From: Ylistrum balloti
Lineage: Eukaryota
DNA: 64,000 bases
Direction of reading: 5' to 3'
Assembly (NCBI RefSeq): GCF_031769215.1
Contig: NW_026782164.1
Span: 372,001 to 436,000 of the forward strand
Translations under genes and position numbers: made by a program
Shown here: positions 44,110-59,634 of the stretch, one piece after another
How the letters are laid out: the number at the start of each line of letters is the position of its first letter
How positions within the stretch are numbered: the first letter of the stretch is position 1
Notes under the pieces: model-generated
Told to the model about the DNA's origin: nothing
Seen by the model: only the letters and a program-made list of their open reading frames with translations
The model's database searches: none

Positions 44110-45279
44110 TCAACAGTTTTTTTGAAGTGTCTGTTCAGTCTCTGGTGAAACCATTGCAACATTATTTGCAATTCTTGTAAGCAATGGTTGTATCTTATCT
44201 TCATCTAGGTCACTGATCCACAACTCTTTCAAATACTTGTCCATGTAATTTTTCTGACTAGTTATTTCCTCTGCTTTCATGTCAGTGTAGACGACTTGAA
44301 TGAATAGAACATCCTTATAAGGAGCATTATCACCATCACAGAAGCCATGAAGAAGAAGTGCTGCAAATGGTGTTAAGGATTCAAAATTATCCAGAATCAC
44401 ACCTTTTCCTTGTGACTGTCCAAAAATATAATGAAGCTTGTTATCTAACTCCTTTTTTTCTACTGCAGGACTCTCATGACTGAGATCTCTTGTTATATGT
44501 ATGTGTGACCCCTGGCTCCCATGGGATCTGTTAAACAGGCCAGAATATAGAGTAAGTAACTGTTTAGCTAAGCATTCTGCAGTGCGTGACTCTCCATCCT
44601 GGTTTTTTGGGACAACCATCATAAATACAGCAGGAGCTGCAGGGTTTGTCTCCACTATCATGGGTCGGAGCAATCCAAAGATTGTCCTCCAAAAGATTCT
44701 CTCTTGTCCAGGAAATTTCATCTTCAAATCCTTAAATCTTCTCTGAAAATGGTCAAAAGAAATTTTTGTGTTTCCTTCTGGAGTCAAGTTTCCACGAATG
44801 TTATCAGTATTGTTGAAGAAATGACAATTACTGTATATGCCAAACAAAACCATTACAATGGCCAGGACAATAAATGCATATGAGTGGAATGAACGCTCTC
44901 CTGAACTAGATTTTTTACTTGCTTCCTGTGTAGAATGTTCAGCTTTCTTACTTTTACATGGTGATGGACTTCTTTCAAAACTTGAATTACTGGAAAATCC
45001 ATGGTCTGACTGTGAACTGCCAACTGGGGAACATGTTTTGGGTGATTTTCGTGGAGGTGATTGTCCATCCTCAGAAAGTTTTGAAATATTTCGAGCATCA
45101 GGTGAAGTTGATTCTTTCCTTTGAGGAGACGAGTCTATTTCATCACCTGAAAAGTCTATTTCATTATCATTTTCTTTTTTATCATTTTTCCGGATTGGTT
45201 TTCTTGGTGATGGCCCTTTTGAGGGAGCATTTTTGCGTAAGTTGTATGGTGAACCACCGACTTTATTAACCTCGGCCAT
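44110..45279 (-). CDS. TOR1AIP: Torsin-1A-interacting protein (LAP1/LULL1 family), 389 aa from the ATG at 45279, single coding exon
   Basis: Ser/Pro/basic disordered N-terminus and one TM segment (YAFIVLAIVMVLFGIYS). The luminal domain has FPGQERIFW, AECLAKQL, LLHGFCDGDNAPYKD and C-terminal LLTRIAN, matching the LAP1C fold with its Arg finger. A splice acceptor at about 45319 lies upstream of the ATG. Confidence 0.88.
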   Translation of the reverse strand: MAEVNKVGGSPYNLRKNAPSKGPSPRKPIRKNDKKENDNEIDFSGDEIDSSPQRKESTSPDARNISKLSEDGQSPPRKSPKTCSPVGSSQSDHGFSSNSSFERSPSPCKSKKAEHSTQEASKKSSSGERSFHSYAFIVLAIVMVLFGIYSNCHFFNNTDNIRGNLTPEGNTKISFDHFQRRFKDLKMKFPGQERIFWRTIFGLLRPMIVETNPAAPAVFMMVVPKNQDGESRTAECLAKQLLTLYSGLFNRSHGSQGSHIHITRDLSHESPAVEKKELDNKLHYIFGQSQGKGVILDNFESLTPFAALLLHGFCDGDNAPYKDVLFIQVVYTDMKAEEITSQKNYMDKYLKELWISDLDEDKIQPLLTRIANNVAMVSPETEQTLQKNC

Positions 45280-46470
45280 GGGTAATAATCTCAACAGCTT
45301 GGTAGATGCCTTCAGTACCTAAAGTGTAAATAAACAATGAAAAAATAGCAATGGATAATGATTATTATTACAACTTCAAATCAACATAAATTCTTTAAGT
45401 TAAATATTCTAACTTCGTCTTTATGATCACTATAGGAAATTATAGTCTGAATTATTCTGATATTCTATGAATAAATTTAAATCAGAAACAATGAAATCCA
45501 GACTTATATTAAACAAAATATTGACGAACATCACAATAACTTGGACTACTCCATGCCATGGTGATCGAGCCTACACAACTGTACTGTTTGAAAGAAATCT
45601 GTTAAAAAAGTGAGATTTACACAAAAGAAAACAGCCTTGTTGTCATTATTTATTGATTCTGATCGTGTTTACTTCCAGCTGTTTGCTGAAATGTCTACAG
45701 AAAATGCTTAGGGAGATAGATAGGCCTTACTAGGAGTCGATATGAACATTAAAATATCGTTCCTGTATATGACGTAAAATACTGTACAAATTAAACAGAC
45801 TTTGAAAAATACCATCACATAAGTAAGACCACCTATATAATATTACGAATGAGTTCGTATTACATCAAGTTAAAAATGAAAACGCTAATTCAATTCGTAC
45901 ACGTTCGCATACTGGGAAAACGAGGCAAAAACGAAAGTAACCGAAAAACAATTCCGATGTTCAACATAGGGTAATATACGTGATGCCTCTCAAAAAACAC
46001 TATGTTATTATTTGTGGCCAAACTTTGTAAATAATACAGAATCACACACTGAACATCAGTTTTATCTTACGTTATTTTCCTTGAAGTAAACAGTTTGGTA
46101 GTTGATAAACGTTGCCTACCTTTGCACTTCGGCTACCGGAACCGCGGTAATATTTATACGACTAATAAATAAACCGGAATTAATTTCCGGATTTTTCTTC
46201 AATAAAGATATTGGATAATGTAAGCTCTATTCTTTTATCTTTTAATTTTCAATTGAGAATACGATACATGTAAGCTCTATTTCAGTGCAAAGTGGAGTCG
46301 ATCTGTTTTAATGTTATAACGGCCCTTGATGTAATATAGGAAGTTACGGAATGTAAAATGTTTCGGAGCATTTCATCATCATTTTGGATGTGTTCTATAT
46401 ATAGATTTATGTATTTCACCATCACATCACTGAAAGCGTTTTTAGGTTTTGTTGGGATATTTTAAAATAA

Positions 46471-49458: not shown

Positions 49459-50794
49459 TTATATTCGACTTTTTGTCTGCTTCAGAATTGGACATGCCTC
49501 CTCCGGTTCAACGGGAGACAACTCTCACTCAACTGCCAAACCCAAACCAGCTATGTGTACACTTTAAATATTTCGTGACTAACAAAAAGGAAATAGAGAA
49601 ATGAAAACAATAACGTTTTCAACTGAATCACATCAATATCTGAAATTTAAGAAACAGATTGAATTCTAGTTATGAAGGATAAGTTGTGTTAATCATACAT
49701 ACACATTAACACCGTGTAATATTTTTACAACTTTATTCCAACCTCACAACTTTTCGGCGTCATATTTTTGATGTGACATCAACAAAAAATGAGAATGATA
49801 TGAATTTGAACCAGTCTAATGTAATGCTGTTTTCACGAATGTTAACAAAAGTGGCAACGTTATGTGACAAACTGTATATTTAATTCGTTTCTATTTCAAG
49901 CCATAATTATGATAAAAATCAAATGGAGGCAGTCATTTGGAGGTGCCATTTTCGATTCCTGATGTGAATTGTATTGTTATTGTCTATCGTATGACACCAC
50001 AATCTATTTCAGACTGGCACACCCAACAAAAAACGCTCCAGAGTGTATTACGTTAGTGGCATATGCAAAATATTACTGGTGAACTATGGATAACTTAATC
50101 AATACGGAGGATGTGATTAGAATCTGTATTAACATACACGATCTCTGTCAACAACGTTCGATAGGGCTCGGCGAGATGGTTTCACCAAGTAAGCAAGTTC
50201 CAGGAGAAAATAAAACAGACAGAAAGGAAAAAGGATAAGGTCAGTGGGAAAACTTTATGGATGAAAATGGAAGAAGAGATGATTGTGAACAAGTACAGGT
50301 ATATACGTTTACGAACATGGAAACTGGCTGCTCAGGCAGATTTCCAGGAAAATTGCATGTAATAACATTTAGACAATAATTCTAAGGAGGATCCAGTCAT
50401 GATGTTCTACTAACTTTATCAGCCGTTGTGACTCCAAGAGGAACGATATGGACCAACCTCTGTCAGATCACGACAAACCAGGGCCATGCGTTGTCTTGTT
50501 TTTGTTTGTTGTGCTTTGTTTTTCTGTAGGTTTGAAGAAGTAGCGATGTGTACCACAAAGGCAATGAGAGCGAATAGAGGAAAAAACTTGTCCAAATGTA
50601 TTAAATCAGGCCAGGAAACATGGAAGCAGCTTTATGGTACCAAAAACACTTAAATTGATTTCAATGTCATTCTTAAGAAAGATCAACATCACCTGCAACG
50701 ATAATCTGGAATTCCTTGAAAGAGAACTTAGTATCACTTTCATCAGAGATCCTCACAAGCAAGAACAGGTGTCCGATACCTCCCGAACAGATGA

Positions 50795-51310
50795 TTATCA
50801 TCACCAAGAGAGGTCAACATCACCACCAAGAGAGGTCAACATCATCACCAAGAGAGGTCAACACACCACCAAGGGAGGTCAACATCACCACCAAGAGAGG
50901 TCAACAACACCACCAAGGGAGGTCAACATCACCACCAAGAGAGGTCAACAACACCACCAAGGGAGGTCAACATCACCACCAAGAAAGGTCAACAACACCA
51001 CCAAGAGAGGTCAACAACACCACCAAGAGAGGTCAACAACACCACCAAGGGAGGTCAACAACACCACCAAGGGAGGTCAACATCACCACCATGGGAGGTC
51101 AACATCACCACCAAGAGAGGTCAACAACACCACCAAGAGAGGTCAACAACACCGCCAAGAGAGGTCAACAACACCGCCAAGAGAGGTCAACAACACCACC
51201 AAGGGAGGTCAACATCACCACCAAGAGAGGTCAACAACACCACCAAGAGAGGTCAACAACACCGCCAAGAGAGATCAACATCACCGCTAAATGAGGTCAA
51301 CATCACCTTA
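50795..51310. repeat. 22-bp minisatellite, about 23 copies
   Basis: Unit CACCACCAAG(A/G)GAGGTCAACA(T/A). The T-poor strand explains the overlapping repetitive ORFs at 50634 and 50716. Confidence 0.95.
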
Positions 51311-53827
51311 ATAATGGTATCACCTTCCAAACCATTATTGATCTGATTGGGAAGGGAATTAAATCCTGAACAGAATATGATCAAGACCGAGTGATCTAAA
51401 CTACAATTTAGTCTAACCCAGTCATCGACTGAATAACGTATTAAACTACGTGAAATGTAAAGTAATACAACATAGCGCCCAATCAAGAAAGAAGTAATAA
51501 AAATGTCCTGTCCATCTCTGGAGTCCTAGCTACTAACCTCTCACGGCGGATGCTTTACTAGTAGGTTTAAGGAAATGACATTCTAGCTACTTCCATTTTA
51601 AACATCGAAGCTGTATCACAATAGCAATAGACACTTGTGGTTATAGCGTATATATATATTACATATTTAGCAGTGAAATATAGGGATATATCAAACTATT
51701 TTTTTTGATTTAGGATTGACCATCAGAGAGCCTGATACAAATCTACTCCAATTCCAGGCAGGACTACTTTTTAATTTTTTTCCAGTTAACGTTTGAACCA
51801 TTTTATTGTGTATAAGTGACATCAATAAATTGTAAAATCCATGTCCAAACACAAATAAACATTCATTATGATTTATTTATGAGTCTGTATATTTTTACTG
51901 ATTTTTCATGAAATGGACTATTTTTTGCCGCGCACAACATCGTTGTATAATGAGTGAGTGCGTAGTGTCTGGAAAAAGCATGGTCAACTTACCCATTTTA
52001 TAGTTATCGTCAGTTTGCCATTGTTTTGGTTTATTTTTGCGATGAAAATATAATAAACAGAATATTTAATGGTGTCTTATATATATTTTTTATGATATAT
52101 TTGAAATAGGATACAGATGTACACAGAACTTACACTGGTTAAAAGATATAGTCAAAAGGAAACCAAATCCGGGTATATAGTTATCATTACGCACTGAAAA
52201 TTTTCAGCTAGAAATGCGGTCATGCACACACCCAGGAAATACCCAGTAAAATGTAGGGCAATGCATTTTGTTACATATATTCCTTAACGTAGAAGGTTAT
52301 CTGTGCATTGTTCAGAATCACTACGAAGTGTTAAGAACTATCAGCAGGGATATAAATATGTTCAGTGTGTAACACAAATACTTCTGGCCAAGGGGGTCAC
52401 GATCTCCCGATTTCGTGAGTATTTCTCATTTTTTTCCATATTTAGAAATCAGTATCAATGTACAACAGAACTAGTTTAACTCTAGCATAATTTGAACGAG
52501 GACATTGAATAGGTAGACTGACGTGTCATGTTTCAATAGCTTGTGGTGTAAGATATAAAAGTTTCCTTCCAACATTATATTTTATTTATTGTATTTGTTG
52601 CTTTTTGTAATTGTGAACTGTTTCATACACCTTAATTATCACAAAACGTATATTTACACAAATTTAAAATGTACAAAATACTAAGGGGAATTATTGCATC
52701 ATGTATGATATAATTACAGCTTTGTGGTCTATCTTTTAAATAACGTCATTCACAATATTGTTATCCCCATTGTATTGAAACAATGTTTTTTTTTAAATTT
52801 GCGTATCTACCAACTAGAGCACTTTATAATGAGTTCTTAAGCACAATGACAGTTTCTTAATGTTTGCCAAATCTTTTATTGTGTGAAAATACGGCTTGAA
52901 ATTTAAAACTTTGTTTAAGTCACTATGTCTGTAGCAACGTCATAATTATATATATGCAGAGAACTATCTCAGATGTATACACATACCGAGGAATCATTTT
53001 ATAGTCACAAGGTGGACGTTCCTTTAGTTATGATCATTCACAATTGATTTTGCAGTAGAGCTGTACAATAATGAAAACTTTGGAGACGATATTGATATTC
53101 CTAAAAGTAACTAACAATCGAACTTGTTAACAGTTAAATGACTGCTTAATAGATATTTACTTCATATATTTGCATATGTCCTAAAAAATACGTTCAGCTT
53201 TAGTAGAAACCTAATTATCTAAAACTTGCATACACAATACCGTAAAAGCTTACGTCAAGACAGGAATGTTAATTGTTATGGTAGAATTACAAATATCTCG
53301 CAAAACAAGGTAGTTAATAGTGTACCACGTCCTGGTTTGTGTCCAAGTTTTTTCATATCAGCTGAACCATGAACAATTTATAACACATGGTGCAAGCAAT
53401 ATCTAGTAAAATGTCCTTATATAGTAACTTAATACTCCAAAGCTGTATATTAACTTCGGTGTTCATCGAATCAGTGTTTTCAATTCATTCAAGGTATTTT
53501 TGCTGGGAGTCTAAATTTACCTTTATGCAATAGGGATATCGGGTGTGTACCTGCATGTCTGTAGTATTAGACCATCCGGTGAGTGAGTATATAGACTATT
53601 GCATATTGACAGGACAAAATCGATGAAAATTGACTTCTGGTCACATTTTTGTGTGTTACATTACACCTTAATGCATAATCAAGTGTATTTTGTAAAATCT
53701 TCCTTCGTAAATACAAAGTCACTTTGCATATTTACACATTGATCTTTACAGAGCTACATGTATACAGTTGATCTACAAAACCATGATATCACAATAAATG
53801 TCTATAATTGTTTCTTCTTTTGCAGGT

Positions 53828-56800
53828 ATGACTATGGAAAGTGAGGATCTAAGATTCAATTCATACCATTCAGACAATGTCCAACTGTATAACGACCATC
53901 GATCCGCGCGGATTGCAGATAAATCTAGTGTTTTACGTATTCACCCGGCGTTAGTACCTGACCATAGGTACAAACTGATAGTGGAGGGTAAAGGGAAGAT
54001 CGACGTCGTTTTGACACATAATGCTAAAGCTTTTGAACGCCAGACAAAAATAACATTAGAAAAAGCCACCTACGACACGCATATTTATCACATGCATCTT
54101 CATAGTGATGAGCACCTGCTGAACAATGGTAGCAAAGACGCAAAGGGAACAGAAAAGACTTGTTTAAATTACAGTTTTGTTGTGGAAAAGGAGAGTATGC
54201 AAAGTGATGATCACGCTTGGCGGATTGATGATTTGAAGTGTGAACCAGGCCAGTCCTGGCATCTCTTGTTTAGTGTGGAGGGAAACATTAGTCTAATAAC
54301 CTTGCCAACAGAGGGTACGTACAACATTATTATTAATATTCACATATTCCTTAAAAATGCAATCTTGAATTCATTCTTATTTAAAGAGCGATTAATGTGA
54401 CAAATGTATATAACATATATAGAGTGAATGAATTTTTAATTGCAGGTTGCCAAAGAGAGGAACAACTAAGATTTGTTAGCGTTGATGACCATACTGAACA
54501 CCTTAGTGTAGACAAATTAACATATAGACGTTCTATCGAATGCACAGAGATTTGTTTTGGGAATAGACTGTTACATCAAAATGAAGAGATAAAACTAATG
54601 GTGATGAGAAAGGAAAGTCACGCAGTGTGTGAGATACGCGCTATATCCGACGAAAATTTCAGATGTTTGGTTAGGACAAACAGTGACGCCAGATACATGA
54701 ATATTTGTAAACCTCAACTGTCCGTCGTTCTGCGAAACAACGTATTAAGTGACCCAATGACGAGTCAAATCCAGGTCAAGGTTCCAATGCAATCATCTGG
54801 ATGGCCAGTGTTCATCTTTTCTGGTTGTACACTGGAGTTTGGTTCAGGTATCTATTTCAGAATAACACAAATGACATAATGCATGTTAAGATTTCATTGA
54901 TGATACTGTTTATTTTCTTTTGTTGATTTTTCGTTTACAAATCAATAAGCTAAAACAAAATAAGAGATTAAGATTTGGATTTCTTTAGGACAATGTAACC
55001 AATTACCACAATATATACTTTTTAGCCCTACGAAAATATATGTAGAAATATTATTACCAATCACTTCGAGGAACTGGATTGAAAACGGTTTCCATTCCAA
55101 GGTAATTCAGCATCAGCTGCATTCCTCTAAACATCTTTTCAGATTTCCCGAGTCGAGGTTTGCCTGAGGAGCCTATTCTAAATGAATTAACTGAAGCTTC
55201 AAAAGAGCCTGAACTACTTCAACAGATACAGAGTGAATTGGCATCTTTAAAAGCAGAACTCGATGTGAAAAGAAAAGACGACATGGAACACCAGAAGAAA
55301 CTACAGGAACAGTTGAGAGCCTCTCAAGAAGAAGCTAAACAGCAGTCTACTTCTCTGTTGGAGATGAGAGACCAGCAAAGTGAGATATTAAGTGGCATCA
55401 ACGATACAAAGACGGTAGTCAAACGTCAAACAAAAACGATAATGACCAAATTAAACAGATTTAAGACGATGGGGAAAGAAGATGGGTCGTTTGAAATGTT
55501 GAGAAAGTACATCAGTCCGAACTACAGCCGGATTAATAACTCTCTTGAAATAAAGGAATTTATGGACTATTTGCTACAATATGGAGTGTTAACTGATCAG
55601 CAATACGATGACATCAAGAACAGGGTATGTAAATTACTACTATTTGTTCCTTGGTATTGCAGTCGAAGTTTATAATAGAATTAGATCAGAATTCAAGATG
55701 ATCACTTCTTTAAAATTGTTCCACATGTATTTATGAAACGCTGTGAATAAATGTAGAAACCATATTTTATGTAAGAAATTAATTCCAAACTTTACAAAAA
55801 TAGATCATTGGATATTATAAAATACATTACAGAAACACACACGCGCATGTTATATAGATACTATACTTATAAAAAAGGGTTTGATCTTAGAAAGTAGATT
55901 AAAAGCTAAAAACCAATTTGCTGCCGCACTAATTTTCCAGTACAGGCGTCGGTAGATGTAAAACAGTAATGATTCATTTTCATAGATTATTTTTATTTTT
56001 TTCCTGAATAACAGATATTTCTTGTCATTTTCGCGGCAACTTGTTTTGAAATATTTTTTTGCCTTTCAGTACAAGATACGGTAATGATACTTGGATATCA
56101 AGAAAAATATTGTGCAAAATACTAACTAAATTTCCATTTGCTTTAATGAGCTTCATATTGCATAAGAAAAAACTGGAAATTTTCCAAAATTACCTGAATC
56201 TTTTATTTGACTTTATCTTTTACATTTAGATAGAGAAATTATCGATTATACTTTTCCTTATTGAAACAGAGGGGATCACTGTGCTTTATTTTTCTTAGCA
56301 ATTTGTATCCAAAAAGACAGTTATCTAGAGATCAAGAAGCAGGCCAAATTATTTGCTTTCGGATCCTTAAAATCCAGAAAAATGATCCAGCAAATTTCTT
56401 CCCAAGATTCCAGATTTACACTTAAGAGAATAATCTTAATAACCATCAAACGTTAACATTGTTGACGCTATTTACCGAATCACGCCGTCAATTAGGTCAT
56501 CAAAAAGTAGTCCACCAATGAAATTTCCTCAAATCATCCTAAAAAAAAAGTCCGTGAAGTTGATTCCCTATTCCCTAATCCTTATTCCATTACTTATTCG
56601 ACGGTGCAGTTGATTACGTTTTCCTTATTCCTTATTCAATTACCTATTCTAAATTTTCATTCCTAATTCAATACCTATTATTTATTGATTTAAAAATTAT
56701 GAAATAACACAATAAATGTTTCTGAATAATTATCAAACCTGCCCATTCTATTATTCCTCTTTTCTATTACAGTGTACATATTCAGTACACTTTTCTTAAT

Positions 56801-59443
56801 CCATTCCCTCATTTGTTATTCGATATTCCCATTACTTATAAACAATAAAAATAGTTTTAAATGAATGAATAAACGTTTTAATTGCATTTTCCACCTATAC
56901 AACATATGTAAAGTGCTCATTACTTATTCCAATCCTTCATTACTTATTCGATTTTCTCATTACTTATTCGATTTATTATCATTTATAAACAATATGCATA
57001 GCTTTAAATGAATGAATAAACGTTTTAATTAAATTTTCGACCAATAAGACACATGTAAAGTGCTCATTACTTATTCCAATCCTTCATTACTTATTCGATT
57101 TTCTCATTACTTATTCGATTTTTTCATTATTTATAAACAATATGCATAGCTTTAAATGAATGGATAAACGTTTTAATTAAATTTTCGACCAATAAGACAC
57201 ATGTAAAGTGCTCATTACGTATTCCAATCCTTCATTACTTATTCGATTTATTATCATTTATAAATAATGTAGATAGTTTTAAAATGAAGAATTAGACGAT
57301 TTCATTCTATTTTCGACCTGTTTATCGGAGATACTGTACTCATTATGTATTAGAATCTGATATTTCTTTAGAATCTATTGTCAAAATGAACGGTGAAATA
57401 CGTATCAACTATTATTATATCCATAACTTATTCATACTTTCATTTCTTATTCTGAAACTGGTATTACTGAATTGAATTCTCACTTTTCTTACTCTTTACC
57501 CTTTGTCCACTTTCCTGTCCATACTTGGTTAAAACAAATCATTGGGTATTTCTATTACTTATTTGAGTTTTATATATGTCGAAATCAATGTTCACTTCCT
57601 GCTCGAATCCTTTACAATGAATAATTTTCTTATTTTCTTTTATTTTAATATATCAGTTTGCTGTATCTTGTACGTTTATTTTGACTGTAATCCAAAGTTT
57701 ATTTACCGACTGGCATTACTGACAATATAGATGAAAACGTTAATCAATTATTAGTAATCCTAACAATCCTATTAGTCTATGTTTCTATCATGTCGCAGCC
57801 ATTTAGCTACAAAAAACATGATGGAAGATTAAATGGAAACTTTAGAAAATCTCGTCAGGTCATGTGAATACGGTCCATACAAAAAGTCTGCAAGATGGTT
57901 GGCAAATATATGATTGAATTATGAAATGTTTTAATGAGTAATGTCCTTCTGTATTGTCCGGTATGTAGAAAAATATTGTTGTTTTTCCCCTCCACTCGGG
58001 TGTACCAATTTAAAGAAGATTTCAAGTCGTTCTCACGACATTTGTAGGTGGAAAGAACGAAAGTTCTAGGTCGCTAATTTGCCGATTTTAATTTCGTTTT
58101 TTTTTCACTCTACTTTTGTCGTTTTTTCGTGGCGAAATAAAGAAATGGCACAAATCATAGAGGCATAAAAAGAAAGATCAATCAAATTGAAGCATTTTGT
58201 AGGAAAAGAGACAAACATAAACACCATTGTGAACATATACATTATGGCTTCTCTCGTAAATTTCCTAACTCATTCATATTAAAATACAAAATGTCAGATC
58301 ACCATTGTCATCGTTAAGATATAAAAACAACACATATAGAAATCCAGTTCATTTACATTAATTAAATTCGTAACAAAAATCAAAGTAAAGGTAAGGAAAA
58401 ATGTACTCCAAATGTTTCTCCTACGATACATGCAGATATTGCTATACTCAGTTTTTTTTATCTGACCCGTTAGATCCGAATGATATATACTTACCGGGAT
58501 TCGTCAGTTAGGGGGTATGGGTTAGGGTACAAATTAACGTTAGGAAAATCCTAAGTAACGAGGAAATCGAATAAGTAATAAAGGTTTCGAATAAGTAATC
58601 AGCATTCTACATGTGTTGTATAGGTCGAAGAAAGGAATTAAAACATTTATGCATTCATTTAAAATGATCTTTATTTTCTATAAGTAATGAGGGGAGGAAT
58701 AACAAAAAGGAACTGAGTACATAATAGAAAGGAGGAACAATAGAATGGGCACGTTTGATAATTATTCAGAAGCATTTATAGTGTTATTACATAATGATTA
58801 CATGAATAAATGATAGGTATTGAATTAGGAATGGAAGTGTCGAATTGGTAATTGAATAAGGAATAAGGAATAAGTAATCAACTGCTACGTCGAATAAGTA
58901 ATGGAATAAGGAATAGGGAATAGGGAATCAACTTCACGGAGGTAAAAAAAAACGTATTTTAAGCTTATAAGTTTAACTGTAGAAGTCCAAGATAATATAT
59001 TGGAATTTATTTTATATTGCATGTCTTACTTTCGGTGAACACATCAGTGGTGTGCATCCTTAAGGTGTTAAATAGTAATGCTTTTATTCTCAGTCTTCAG
59101 ATCTGAATAACTACACACGCATCATACGTATTGCATAATACATTTCATATACAAGTATGAATAAAATTCAGTGGAGCATTTTATTTGGTTTCTTTCATTT
59201 GATTATAATTATGTACATGCTTCATTTACATGTTCTAAAATAAATGATTTCCTACAAAATCCTAAAAGTAATTTTGTGTTTAAGGATCTTAACCTTGTTT
59301 ATGGTATATCGTTACAGAACCAAGGTGAACAAAGATGTGATCTACTAGAAATTCTACGAAGGAAACCAGTAAGTTATCTGCCAGAAGTGGTAAAGGCACT
59401 TGAGAGAAGTGGAAACAAACACTTGCTCATGTATTTCAAAGAC
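53828..59443 (+). CDS. Spliced gene encoding two Neuralized-like (NHR) repeats, a coiled coil and a CARD/death-fold domain; exons 53826-54314, 54446-54847, 55143-55624, 59318-(59443, gap); about 500 aa visible
   Basis: GT-AG introns with phases 1,1,0 join the ORFs 53798, 54397, 55160 and 59171 in frame. Exons 1 and 2 begin LRFNSYHSDNVQLYNDHRSAR and LRFVSVDDHTEHLSVDKLTYRR..CFGNRLLHQNEEIKL. Heptad-rich QQIQSELASLKAELD..LQEQL follows. The C-terminus LRKYISPNYSRINNSLEIKEFMDYLLQYGVLTDQQYDDIKNR|NQGEQRCDLLEILRRKP..VVKALERSGNKHLL is CARD-like. The 3' end is lost in a gap. Confidence 0.78.
56550..58942. mobile_element. Foldback-like element of about 2.4 kb with long terminal inverted repeats, intronic
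   Basis: TCCGTGAAGTTGATTCCCTATTCCCT..TTCCATTACTTATTCGACG from 56551 is matched in reverse complement ending at 58940, with similarity over about 300-400 bp. Three internal units of about 147 bp start at 56906, 57053 and 57201. TAAAAAAAAA flanks both ends. Confidence 0.85.
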
Positions 59444-59634
59444 NNNNNNNNNNNNNNNNNNNNNNNNNNNNNNNNNNNNNNNNNNNNNNNNNNNNNNNNN
59501 NNNNNNNNNNNNNNNNNNNNNNNNNNNNNNNNNNNNNNNNNNNNNNNNNNNNNNNNNNNNNNNNNNNNNNNNNNNNNNNNNNNNNNNNNNNNNNNNNNNN
59601 NNNNNNNNNNNNNNNNNNNNNNNNNNNNNNNNNN
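59444..59634. other. Assembly gap
   Basis: Run of N. Confidence 0.99.

What the first reader, a model, noticed from the sequence alone, without database searches (positions are those of the whole stretch)
53826..59443. Unannotated NHR-NHR-coiled coil-CARD protein: candidate new death-fold signalling adaptor
Seen: four separate ORF-track fragments splice into one frame of about 500 aa through canonical sites. Known: NHR (Neuralized) repeats are peptide-binding modules of Neuralized/NEURL proteins, usually paired with a RING or SOCS box, while CARDs nucleate caspase or immune signalling complexes. Inference: two diverged NHR-like repeats joined through an oligomerising coiled coil to a C-terminal CARD is an architecture I do not know. 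It looks like a sensor-oligomeriser-effector design for innate immunity or apoptosis. Each NHR-like repeat sits on its own phase 1-1 exon, as expected from exon shuffling.
Basis: partly seen in the sequence, partly recalled or inferred. Interest (0 to 1): 0.85.

Follow-up and report, generated by a model that had tools for sequence, protein, structure and literature searches.

The report
Scallop NHR/SPRY-like, coiled-coil, CARD protein
This is a real scallop gene, already in RefSeq as an "uncharacterized protein", whose product joins two SPRY/Neuralized-type beta-sandwich domains through a long heptad helix to a CARD; it is an untested lineage-restricted member of the known class of SPRY-like sensors fused to death-fold adaptors, not a wholly new architecture.

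Summary
**Observation: confirmed.** The four fragments join through AG/GT sites into one 499-codon frame. That frame is letter-for-letter XP_060071189.1, "uncharacterized protein LOC132551098" of Ylistrum balloti (500 aa), so the gene is annotated, just unnamed.

**The gene is real.**
- Argopecten irradians has a full-length 495-aa homologue (46% identity) with identical intron positions and phases.
- Mizuhopecten yessoensis has a partial homologue.
- An exhaustive search with exon 1 found nothing outside scallops.

**Domains**
- CARD: passes Pfam's gathering score (27.9 against 23.9 bits).
- Residues about 316-405: strong, conserved 3.5-residue hydrophobic periodicity, consistent with a coiled coil.
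- Neither N-terminal domain matches Pfam NHR or SPRY, and the two show no sequence similarity to each other.
- At fold level both look like SPRY/NHR-type sandwiches. Domain 1 is nearest to Neuralized NHR. Domain 2 is less certain.

**Novelty is limited.** An ESM Atlas cluster of 59 proteins, mostly mollusc where the phylum is known, carries Neuralized (66% of members) and CARD (25%). SPRY-like plus death-fold fusions are already described (PMC8195603).

**Gaps.** No RNA run was available, so the splice junctions rest on conservation. The proposed function (ligand sensing, oligomerisation, CARD recruitment) is inferred.

The scan's first readers have also noted other CARD fusions elsewhere in this genome; I did not check them.

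The parts
53826..54314 (+). Coding exon 1. The start ATG is at 53828. It encodes residues 1-163, which form beta-sandwich domain 1 (NHR-like). The exon ends in phase 1.
   Evidence: AG acceptor and GT donor. Identical to P0001 residues 1-162. Fold neighbours are NHR and SPRY.
54446..54847 (+). Coding exon 2, 402 nt, phase 1-1. It encodes residues about 164-297, which form beta-sandwich domain 2 (SPRY/NHR-like, less certain).
   Evidence: Splice sites. The exon has the same length and phases in Argopecten. Atlas structural neighbours are SPRY domains. My own model matches generic jelly rolls.
55143..55624 (+). Coding exon 3, ending in phase 0. It encodes a short Pro/Gly-rich linker, the heptad helix (residues about 316-405, 55199-55468) and the first half of the CARD (residues about 415-457, 55496-55624).
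   Evidence: Splice sites. Heptad periodicity: 0 of 2000 shuffles reach the observed power. A partial CARD hit in this exon alone.
59318..59443 (+). Coding exon 4 as far as it can be read. It encodes the second half of the CARD (residues 458-499). The last residue of the public model and the stop codon lie in the masked stretch 59444-59634, which I did not fill.
   Evidence: AG acceptor. CARD PF00619 spans residues 426-496 of P0001 at 27.9 bits, above the 23.9 cut-off. The Argopecten protein ends at the equivalent place.

Best explanation
The region is a genuine protein-coding gene of the saucer scallop Ylistrum balloti (LOC132551098, XP_060071189.1, 500 aa). It is restricted, as far as could be found, to Pectinidae.

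The product has four parts:
- Residues 1-163: a concanavalin-like beta sandwich nearest to the Neuralized homology repeat.
- Residues 164-297: a second beta sandwich of SPRY/NHR type.
- Residues about 316-405: a proline-free, charge-rich helix with conserved heptad spacing, probably a coiled coil.
- Residues about 415-497: a CARD.

Shown here: the gene model, its conservation under purifying selection, the CARD, the heptad periodicity and the all-beta sandwich nature of the N-terminal half.

Inferred mechanism: the two SPRY/NHR-like domains bind a protein or peptide ligand, either host-derived or pathogen-derived. The helix dimerises or oligomerises the protein. The clustered CARDs then recruit a CARD-bearing partner (a CARD caspase, or an adaptor of the BCL10, MAVS or RIG-I-like type) to start cell-death or innate-immune signalling.

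This is the logic of pyrin and TRIM-type SPRY sensors, with the domain order reversed and a CARD as output. It is one lineage-specific member of the wider, already noted class of SPRY-like plus death-fold fusion proteins.

The confidence given (0.7) is for the anatomy: a real gene encoding two SPRY/NHR-type sandwiches, a heptad helix and a CARD. The proposed mechanism taken alone deserves about 0.4.
For: **Gene model**
- Canonical splice sites and one open frame.
- Identical to the RefSeq protein.
- The Argopecten homologue is 46% identical over the full length, with identical intron positions and phases.
- The partial Mizuhopecten protein ends exactly at the exon 3 boundary.

**Constraint**
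- Between the two full-length genes, pN is 0.35 against pS 0.71 overall. The CARD is the most conserved part (pN 0.24, 62% amino-acid identity) and the helix the least.
- The frame is intact in a second individual's DNA contigs over exons 1-3 and the first 47 nt of exon 4, which is as far as they reach.

**CARD**
- PF00619 scores 27.9 bits against a 23.9 cut-off in P0001. The isolated Argopecten CARD scores 26.6 bits.
- Weak PDB profile hits are to the CARDs of Apaf-1, RAIDD and caspase-9.

**Helix**
- Conserved hydrophobic positions have 3.5-3.6-residue periodicity. No shuffle out of 2000 reaches it.

**Domain 1**
- VIA-align against 48,161 PDB chains puts TRIM11 PRYSPRY (Z 8.2, rmsd 2.8, 110 aligned) and Neuralized NHR 2yue (Z 8.2, rmsd 3.5, 107 aligned) jointly on top.
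- The Atlas's own model has 8 of 10 neighbour rows with PF07177, at TM by query 0.65-0.74. Feature scores are 0.92 for SPRY and 0.90 for Neuralized.

**Domain 2**
- The Atlas model's neighbours are SPRY domains of TRIM9, TRIM36 and butyrophilin, at TM 0.69-0.72.

**Class precedent**
- PMC8195603 describes SPRY-like plus death-fold fusions.
- PMC11251625 describes NHR-caspase fusions in Anthozoa.
- An Aplysia immunome figure of TIR- and COR-domain proteins lists NHR and Death among the domains drawn (PMC9334734).
Against: - No Pfam NHR or SPRY match for either domain in any of the three species, at E up to 10.
- No NHR hit in PDB profile searches.
- hhalign finds no relation between the two domains.
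- All structure models are low-confidence: AF2 mean pLDDT 48.9 and 50.6 from 3-sequence alignments, and the Atlas model has pLDDT 0.55 and pTM 0.28.
- My AF2 model of domain 2 matches generic jelly rolls (CBMs, IFT25) at Z 6.3 or less. NHR comes only at rank 49 with Z 4.8, and the Atlas shape search on that model gives CBM6-like rows.
- Z about 8 is within the range the tool calls 'middling'.
- No RNA evidence of expression or of the junctions. The only run holding the stretch consists of contigs that run through the introns.
- No experiment bears on ligand, oligomerisation or CARD partner.
Confidence: 0.7

Rival explanations
1. The N-terminal domains are not NHR/SPRY peptide binders. They are lectin-type jelly rolls (galectin-like or CBM-like), and the protein is a cytosolic glycan sensor coupled to a CARD.
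For: - Foldseek on the 1-300 model lists galectins, with probability up to 0.94 and TM by target up to 0.52.
- VIA-align puts galectins at Z 7.1-7.8 for domain 1, within 1 Z of the top rows and therefore tied with them.
- Domain 2 of my model is nearest to carbohydrate-binding modules at Z 5.0-6.3.
Against: - Galectin, SPRY and NHR all share the concanavalin-like fold, so these hits do not separate them.
- The Atlas neighbours are overwhelmingly Neuralized for domain 1 and SPRY for domain 2.
- No Pfam galectin or CBM hit.
- The models are low-confidence.
Confidence: 0.15
2. The locus is a decaying or functionless lineage-specific gene: a by-product of death-fold domain shuffling that is predicted by annotation pipelines but not used.
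For: - No RNA run could be found.
- A second individual differs at 10 nucleotides in exon 3, of which 9 are nonsynonymous. That is a higher density (2.1%) than in the adjoining intron (about 0.9%).
- The family is tiny, with three scallop sequences.
Against: - The frame is intact in three genera, and in the parts of a second individual's gene that its contigs cover.
- Intron positions are conserved.
- pN is well below pS in every domain, and lowest in the CARD.
- With only ten differences, a 9:1 ratio cannot be told apart from neutral expectation (my own estimate, not a tool result).
Confidence: 0.1
3. The gene model is chimeric: the N-terminal exons and the CARD exons belong to different transcripts.
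For: Intron 3 is long (3693 bp) and holds a transposon-like insert. No junction reads exist.
Against: - The CARD is split by intron 3, so exon 3 alone holds only half a domain.
- In Argopecten the same intron is only 424 bp and the same 4-exon product is predicted.
- The Mizuhopecten fragment links domain 1, domain 2, the helix and the first CARD half in one protein.
Confidence: 0.03

Closest known systems
Mollusc Neuralized (PF07177) + CARD (PF00619) proteins: ESM Atlas cluster of 59 members, 393-aa representative, named only 'hypothetical protein'
   Same: It is a structural neighbour of domain 1 (TM by query 0.71 over 141 residues). It combines NHR and CARD families and is mostly from Mollusca where the phylum is known.
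   Different: Those NHRs are recognisable by Pfam and ours are not. The representative is about 100 residues shorter, so it may have a single NHR or no long helix. I could not fetch its members, so homology of the whole architecture is untested.
Neuralized / NEURL1-4 and Ozz (NEURL2): NHR proteins
   Same: Domain 1 has the NHR-type concanavalin-like sandwich and is nearest to 2yue and to NEURL clusters. From memory only, and so a lead rather than a test: both domains open with a motif (L-R-F, then a hydrophobic strand, then A/Y-x-R) that resembles the start of NHRs.
   Different: There is no RING, SOCS box or HECT domain, and the output is a CARD. The protein does not reach the Pfam NHR profile at any listed E-value.
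Pyrin (TRIM20) and TRIM-type B30.2/SPRY innate sensors
   Same: The design pairs a SPRY-like ligand-binding sandwich and a coiled coil with a death-fold output, or in most TRIMs a ubiquitin-ligase output. PRYSPRY domains of TRIM11, MID1, TRIM10, TRIM5alpha and TRIM20 are among the top fold matches.
   Different: The order is reversed (sensor at the N terminus, death fold at the C terminus). The death fold is a CARD, not a PYD. There are two sandwiches and no RING or B-box.
CARD9 / CARMA (CARD11, CARD10, CARD14) coiled-coil CARD scaffolds
   Same: A CARD next to a long coiled coil that would control CARD clustering.
   Different: In those proteins the CARD is N-terminal to the coiled coil, and none has SPRY/NHR domains. 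No sequence relation was found beyond the CARD family. The nearest solved CARDs by profile were Apaf-1, RAIDD and caspase-9, and only weakly (E 0.06-0.95).
Anthozoan NHR-caspases (NHR + CASc; PMC11251625)
   Same: An NHR domain wired directly into the cell-death machinery of an invertebrate. One member is strongly induced by a dsRNA mimic.
   Different: There the NHR is fused to the protease itself. Here it is fused to a recruitment domain. The two are in different phyla, and no sequence comparison was made.

Membership tests
CARD (Pfam PF00619, death-fold superfamily) | Profile match above the curated gathering score | tested here: met
   P0001 scores 27.9 bits against a 23.9 cut-off (E 2.4e-06) over residues 426-496, covering profile positions 10-81 of 85. 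The isolated C terminus scores 31.2 bits. The isolated Argopecten CARD scores 26.6 bits, while the full-length Argopecten protein scores 22.8, just under the cut-off.
CARD (Pfam PF00619, death-fold superfamily) | Six-helix bundle fold | not tested
   Both structure-prediction jobs went to the N-terminal domains. Weak PDB profile hits align over 72 residues to the CARDs of Apaf-1, RAIDD and caspase-9 (E 0.06-0.95).
CARD (Pfam PF00619, death-fold superfamily) | Homotypic CARD-CARD binding or filament formation | not testable with these tools
   This needs a pull-down, yeast two-hybrid or filament assay.
Neuralized homology repeat (Pfam PF07177 / SMART NEUZ) | Profile match to the NHR model | tested here: not met
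   PF07177 is not listed at E up to 10 for either domain of the Ylistrum, Argopecten or Mizuhopecten proteins. PDB profile searches found no NHR chain.
Neuralized homology repeat (Pfam PF07177 / SMART NEUZ) | NHR-type concanavalin-like beta sandwich, domain 1 | tested here: met
   2yue scores Z 8.2 (rmsd 3.5, 107 aligned), joint top of 48,161 chains with TRIM11 PRYSPRY. In the Atlas model, 8 of 10 neighbour rows carry PF07177 at TM 0.65-0.74. All models are low-confidence, and SPRY and galectin hits are tied within 1 Z.
Neuralized homology repeat (Pfam PF07177 / SMART NEUZ) | NHR-type beta sandwich, domain 2 | tested here: inconclusive
   The Atlas model's neighbours are SPRY domains at TM 0.69-0.72, and feature scores for Neuralized and SPRY are 0.85, which is a lead only. 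In my AF2 model, 2yue scores only Z 4.8 at rank 49 (17% identity, the highest in the list), below generic jelly rolls.
Neuralized homology repeat (Pfam PF07177 / SMART NEUZ) | The two domains are sequence-related repeats of each other | tested here: not met
   blastp gives E 2.2. hhalign gives probability 0.4%, with only 5 boundary residues aligned.
Neuralized / NEURL E3-ligase proteins | NHR combined with a RING, SOCS box or HECT domain | tested here: not met
   Pfam finds only the CARD in the full-length proteins.
SPRY / B30.2 (Pfam PF00622) | Profile match to SPRY | tested here: not met
   No PF00622 hit. There is fold-level resemblance only.
Coiled coil | Heptad (3.5-residue) periodicity of conserved hydrophobic positions in a Pro-free helix | tested here: met
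   Over residues 316-405, none of 2000 shuffles reaches the observed power at periods 3.5 and 3.6. There is no signal at periods 2, 3, 4, 5 or 7. The oligomeric state is not testable here.

The most novel reading that the evidence does not exclude
The protein is a scallop-specific cytosolic sensor. Its two fast-evolving NHR/SPRY-like domains recognise a pathogen or danger-derived peptide, and coiled-coil clustering then nucleates a CARD filament that activates a CARD caspase or an NF-kB/interferon-like adaptor. That would make it an independently assembled invertebrate counterpart of pyrin and TRIM sensors. The excess of amino-acid polymorphism around the helix-CARD junction would then reflect host-pathogen conflict.
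Probability: 0.2. Interest if true: 0.55.

Novelty: new member of a known kind. Interest (0 to 1): 0.3.

Why it matters
Bivalves lack adaptive immunity and have greatly expanded and reshuffled their death-fold, TIR and IAP repertoires. Almost none of the lineage-specific fusion proteins has been tested.

This gene is compact (500 aa), conserved and cleanly modular, with a binding half and a signalling half. It is therefore a convenient entry point for two questions: what NHR/SPRY-like domains sense in molluscs, and which CARD partners they feed.

It also shows that NHR-like domains can diverge beyond Pfam's reach, so counts of NHR/SPRY-death-fold fusions in invertebrate genomes are probably underestimates. 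It does not open a new category. The design principle is known, and similar Neuralized+CARD proteins already sit unnamed in databases.

Tried and rejected
**Searches that added nothing**
- Pfam on single exons and on all homologues gave no NHR or SPRY hit.
- PDB sequence-profile searches with both domain alignments gave only chance hits.
- blastp and hhalign of domain 1 against domain 2 gave nothing.
- The exhaustive phmmer search with exon 1 found only two scallop proteins. A third hit, the repetitive 1017-aa P0003, matches by a summed short motif and has unrelated Pfam families, so I rejected it as spurious.
- Three word-indexed homologue searches (N-terminal half, whole-protein profile, CARD region) added only the partial Mizuhopecten protein. 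I could therefore not fetch the mollusc Neuralized+CARD cluster.

**Structure work of limited value**
- AF2 with 3-sequence alignments gave low-confidence models.
- Foldseek against the PDB gave no hit at E 0.001 or better.
- Atlas shape searches with my own models gave generic sandwiches.
- The Atlas feature search with exon 2 alone gave TIG domains at 0.83, below the lead threshold.

**Other checks**
- RNA evidence: the single run holding the stretch is DNA-like, with contigs that cross the introns.
- tblastn found no paralogue in the window.
- There is no shared flanking gene within 10 kb of the Argopecten locus.
- A crude a/d occupancy score for coiled coils was uninformative, so I replaced it with the periodicity test.
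- Literature searches found no paper describing this family.
The motif resemblance I mention is a lead only.
Full report
**1.

The region contains four open segments, each bounded by canonical AG and GT dinucleotides: 53826-54314, 54446-54847, 55143-55624 and 59318-59443. The last segment runs into the masked stretch 59444-59634. Joined together, they give one uninterrupted frame of 499 codons starting at the ATG at 53828.

An exhaustive HMMER search of 1.84 billion representative proteins with exon 1 returned a 500-aa protein, P0001, that is 100% identical. Its full sequence equals the spliced translation plus one further residue. The sources name it XP_060071189.1, "uncharacterized protein LOC132551098 [Ylistrum balloti]".

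It is annotated but unnamed. I did not fill the masked stretch. I note only that the public model is one residue longer than what can be read.

**2. The gene is real and conserved, but narrowly distributed**

- The same search found one other true relative: P0002 (XP_069119436.1, Argopecten irradians, 495 aa). It is 46% identical and aligns end to end.
- A profile search added P0004, a partial 367-aa protein of Mizuhopecten yessoensis. It starts inside domain 1 and stops exactly at the exon 3 boundary.
- A third hit of the exhaustive search, P0003, is a repetitive protein that matches a 34-residue motif eight times and has unrelated Pfam families. I treat it as spurious.
- In the Argopecten locus L001, an exact spliced reconstruction gives four coding exons. 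The introns sit at the same codon positions and phases (1, 1, 0), and exon 2 is again 402 nt. The introns are 319, 844 and 424 bp, against 131, 295 and 3693 bp here.
- Between the two full-length genes, the proportion of nonsynonymous differences (0.35) is half the synonymous proportion (0.71, saturated). The CARD is most constrained (pN 0.24, 62% identity). The helical region is least constrained (pN 0.46, 34% identity).
- No paralogue lies in the window. No flanking gene is shared within 10 kb of the Argopecten locus.

**3. There is no RNA evidence**

Only one public run holds the stretch. Its contigs run straight through introns 1 and 2 and into intron 3, so it is DNA from another individual. 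The junctions therefore rest on conservation, not on reads.

That individual keeps the frame intact, with no indels in exons. It differs at one nucleotide in exons 1-2 and at ten in exon 3. Nine of the ten are nonsynonymous, changing eight residues between positions 374 and 451.

The density in exon 3 (2.1%) exceeds that in the adjoining intron covered by the same contig (about 0.9%). With ten differences this is a hint at most. It could reflect relaxed constraint, diversifying selection, or a divergent allele.

**4. The C-terminal half: CARD and helix**

- Pfam CARD (PF00619) scores 27.9 bits on the whole protein, above the 23.9-bit gathering score. It covers residues 426-496 and 72 of 85 profile positions. 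The isolated C terminus scores 31.2 bits, and the isolated Argopecten CARD scores 26.6 bits.
- Exon 3 alone gave only a half-domain hit. This is expected, because intron 3 splits the CARD.
- A two-sequence CARD profile finds the CARDs of Apaf-1, RAIDD and caspase-9 in the PDB, but only weakly (E 0.06-0.95).
- I did not fold the CARD, so the six-helix bundle is inferred from family membership.
- Residues about 316-405 are nearly free of proline and glycine, and 45% of them are charged or Gln. My first crude register score was uninformative.
- The hydrophobic positions conserved in all three scallops show a sharp 3.5-3.6-residue periodicity that none of 2000 shuffles reaches. There is no signal at other periods. 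This supports a long amphipathic helix of coiled-coil type. The oligomeric state is unknown.

**5. The N-terminal half: two beta sandwiches**

Sequence methods fail here:
- No Pfam NHR or SPRY match at E up to 10 for any of the three species.
- No NHR chain in PDB profile searches.
- No similarity between the two domains by blastp or hhalign.

Structure prediction with only three sequences was poor. Mean pLDDT was 48.9 for residues 1-300 and 50.6 for domain 2 alone, and both models were all-beta.

For domain 1, several partly independent results agree:
- An all-against-all VIA-align search of 48,161 PDB chains put TRIM11 PRYSPRY (Z 8.2, rmsd 2.8, 110 aligned) and the Drosophila Neuralized NHR 2yue (Z 8.2, rmsd 3.5, 107 aligned) jointly first. 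Further PRYSPRY domains, galectins and other concanavalin-like sandwiches followed.
- The ESM Atlas holds this protein letter for letter. For residues 1-165 of its own model (whole-protein pLDDT 0.55), 8 of 10 neighbour rows are Neuralized-family proteins, at TM by query 0.65-0.74.
- The language-model features point to SPRY (0.92) and Neuralized (0.90).

Domain 2 is less clear:
- The Atlas model's neighbours are SPRY domains of TRIM9, TRIM36 and butyrophilin, at TM 0.69-0.72. Feature scores for Neuralized and SPRY are only 0.85.
- My AF2 model matches generic jelly rolls at Z 6.3 or less. 2yue is at rank 49 (Z 4.8), though it has the highest identity in the list, 17%.
- The Atlas shape search with my model gives CBM6-like rows.

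I conclude that both domains are concanavalin-like sandwiches of the SPRY/NHR group. Domain 1 is probably NHR-like. Domain 2 is SPRY/NHR-like with moderate confidence. "Two diverged NHR repeats" is a fold-level reading that Pfam membership does not back. The opening motif of both domains resembles the start of NHRs as I remember them, but that is a lead, not a test.

**6. Comparison with what is known**

- One structural neighbour of domain 1 is an Atlas cluster of 59 proteins, mostly mollusc where the phylum is known. In it, 66% of members carry PF07177 Neuralized and 25% carry PF00619 CARD. Proteins combining NHR and CARD therefore already exist, unnamed, in mollusc data.
- Kaur et al. [quoted passage not shown]
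- Anthozoan caspases with an N-terminal NHR are described, and one is strongly induced by a dsRNA mimic (PMC11251625).
- A figure of TIR- and COR-domain proteins in an Aplysia immunome survey lists NHR and Death among the domains drawn (PMC9334734).
- Four literature searches found no paper on this scallop family or on an NHR-NHR-coiled-coil-CARD protein.
- First readers of this scan have noted four other unusual CARD fusions elsewhere in the same genome. I did not check them. They fit the general picture of death-fold shuffling in bivalves.

**7. Mechanism (inferred)**

The sandwiches would bind a peptide or protein ligand. The helix would oligomerise the protein. The clustered CARDs would recruit a CARD caspase or a CARD adaptor. 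This is the logic of pyrin and TRIM-type sensors, with reversed order and a CARD output.

Rivals:
- A lectin-type glycan sensor. Galectin and CBM fold hits are tied within noise.
- A functionless lineage-specific gene. There is no RNA evidence, and polymorphism is mostly nonsynonymous. Against this stand intact frames in three genera and pN well below pS.
- A chimeric model. Against this stand the split CARD and the orthologues.

**8. Verdict**

The claims of "unannotated" and "unknown architecture" do not hold. This is a new, uncharacterised and unusually diverged member of a known kind. It is worth a modest follow-up and is not a surprise to a specialist in invertebrate immunity.

Noticed in passing
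window 56551-58940 (inside intron 3): A transposon-like insert of about 2.4 kb bounded by 219-nt inverted repeats that are 90% complementary. The left arm also holds three copies of a 148-bp tandem unit (56808-57249). In the DNA run its word depth is 35-218, against about 8-10 in the flanks, so it is a high-copy element. The orthologous Argopecten intron is only 424 bp.
   Followed up: partly
window 55373-55604 (exon 3, residues 374-451): A second individual's contig differs at 10 nucleotides here. Nine are nonsynonymous and change 8 residues. By contrast there is 1 difference in the 891 nt of exons 1-2 and about 9 in 984 nt of the adjoining intron. The sample is too small to tell selection from chance.
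   Followed up: partly
window 44110-45294, minus strand: A 394-aa single-exon ORF with a Pfam LAP1_C match (torsin activator LAP1/LULL1-like, 64.5 bits, E 1e-17). This is the upstream neighbour gene.
   Followed up: partly
window 50802-51307: A minisatellite with a 22-bp unit, 23 copies and 92% matches. It opens long His/Gln/Pro-rich ORFs in several frames (for example 50634-51290). The period is not a multiple of three, so it is probably non-coding.
   Followed up: partly
window 8108-35705: Other first-reader notes on this window describe a tandem pair of acidic double-Kazal genes and a pair of intronless paralogues ending in CCTIL. I did not examine them.
   Followed up: no
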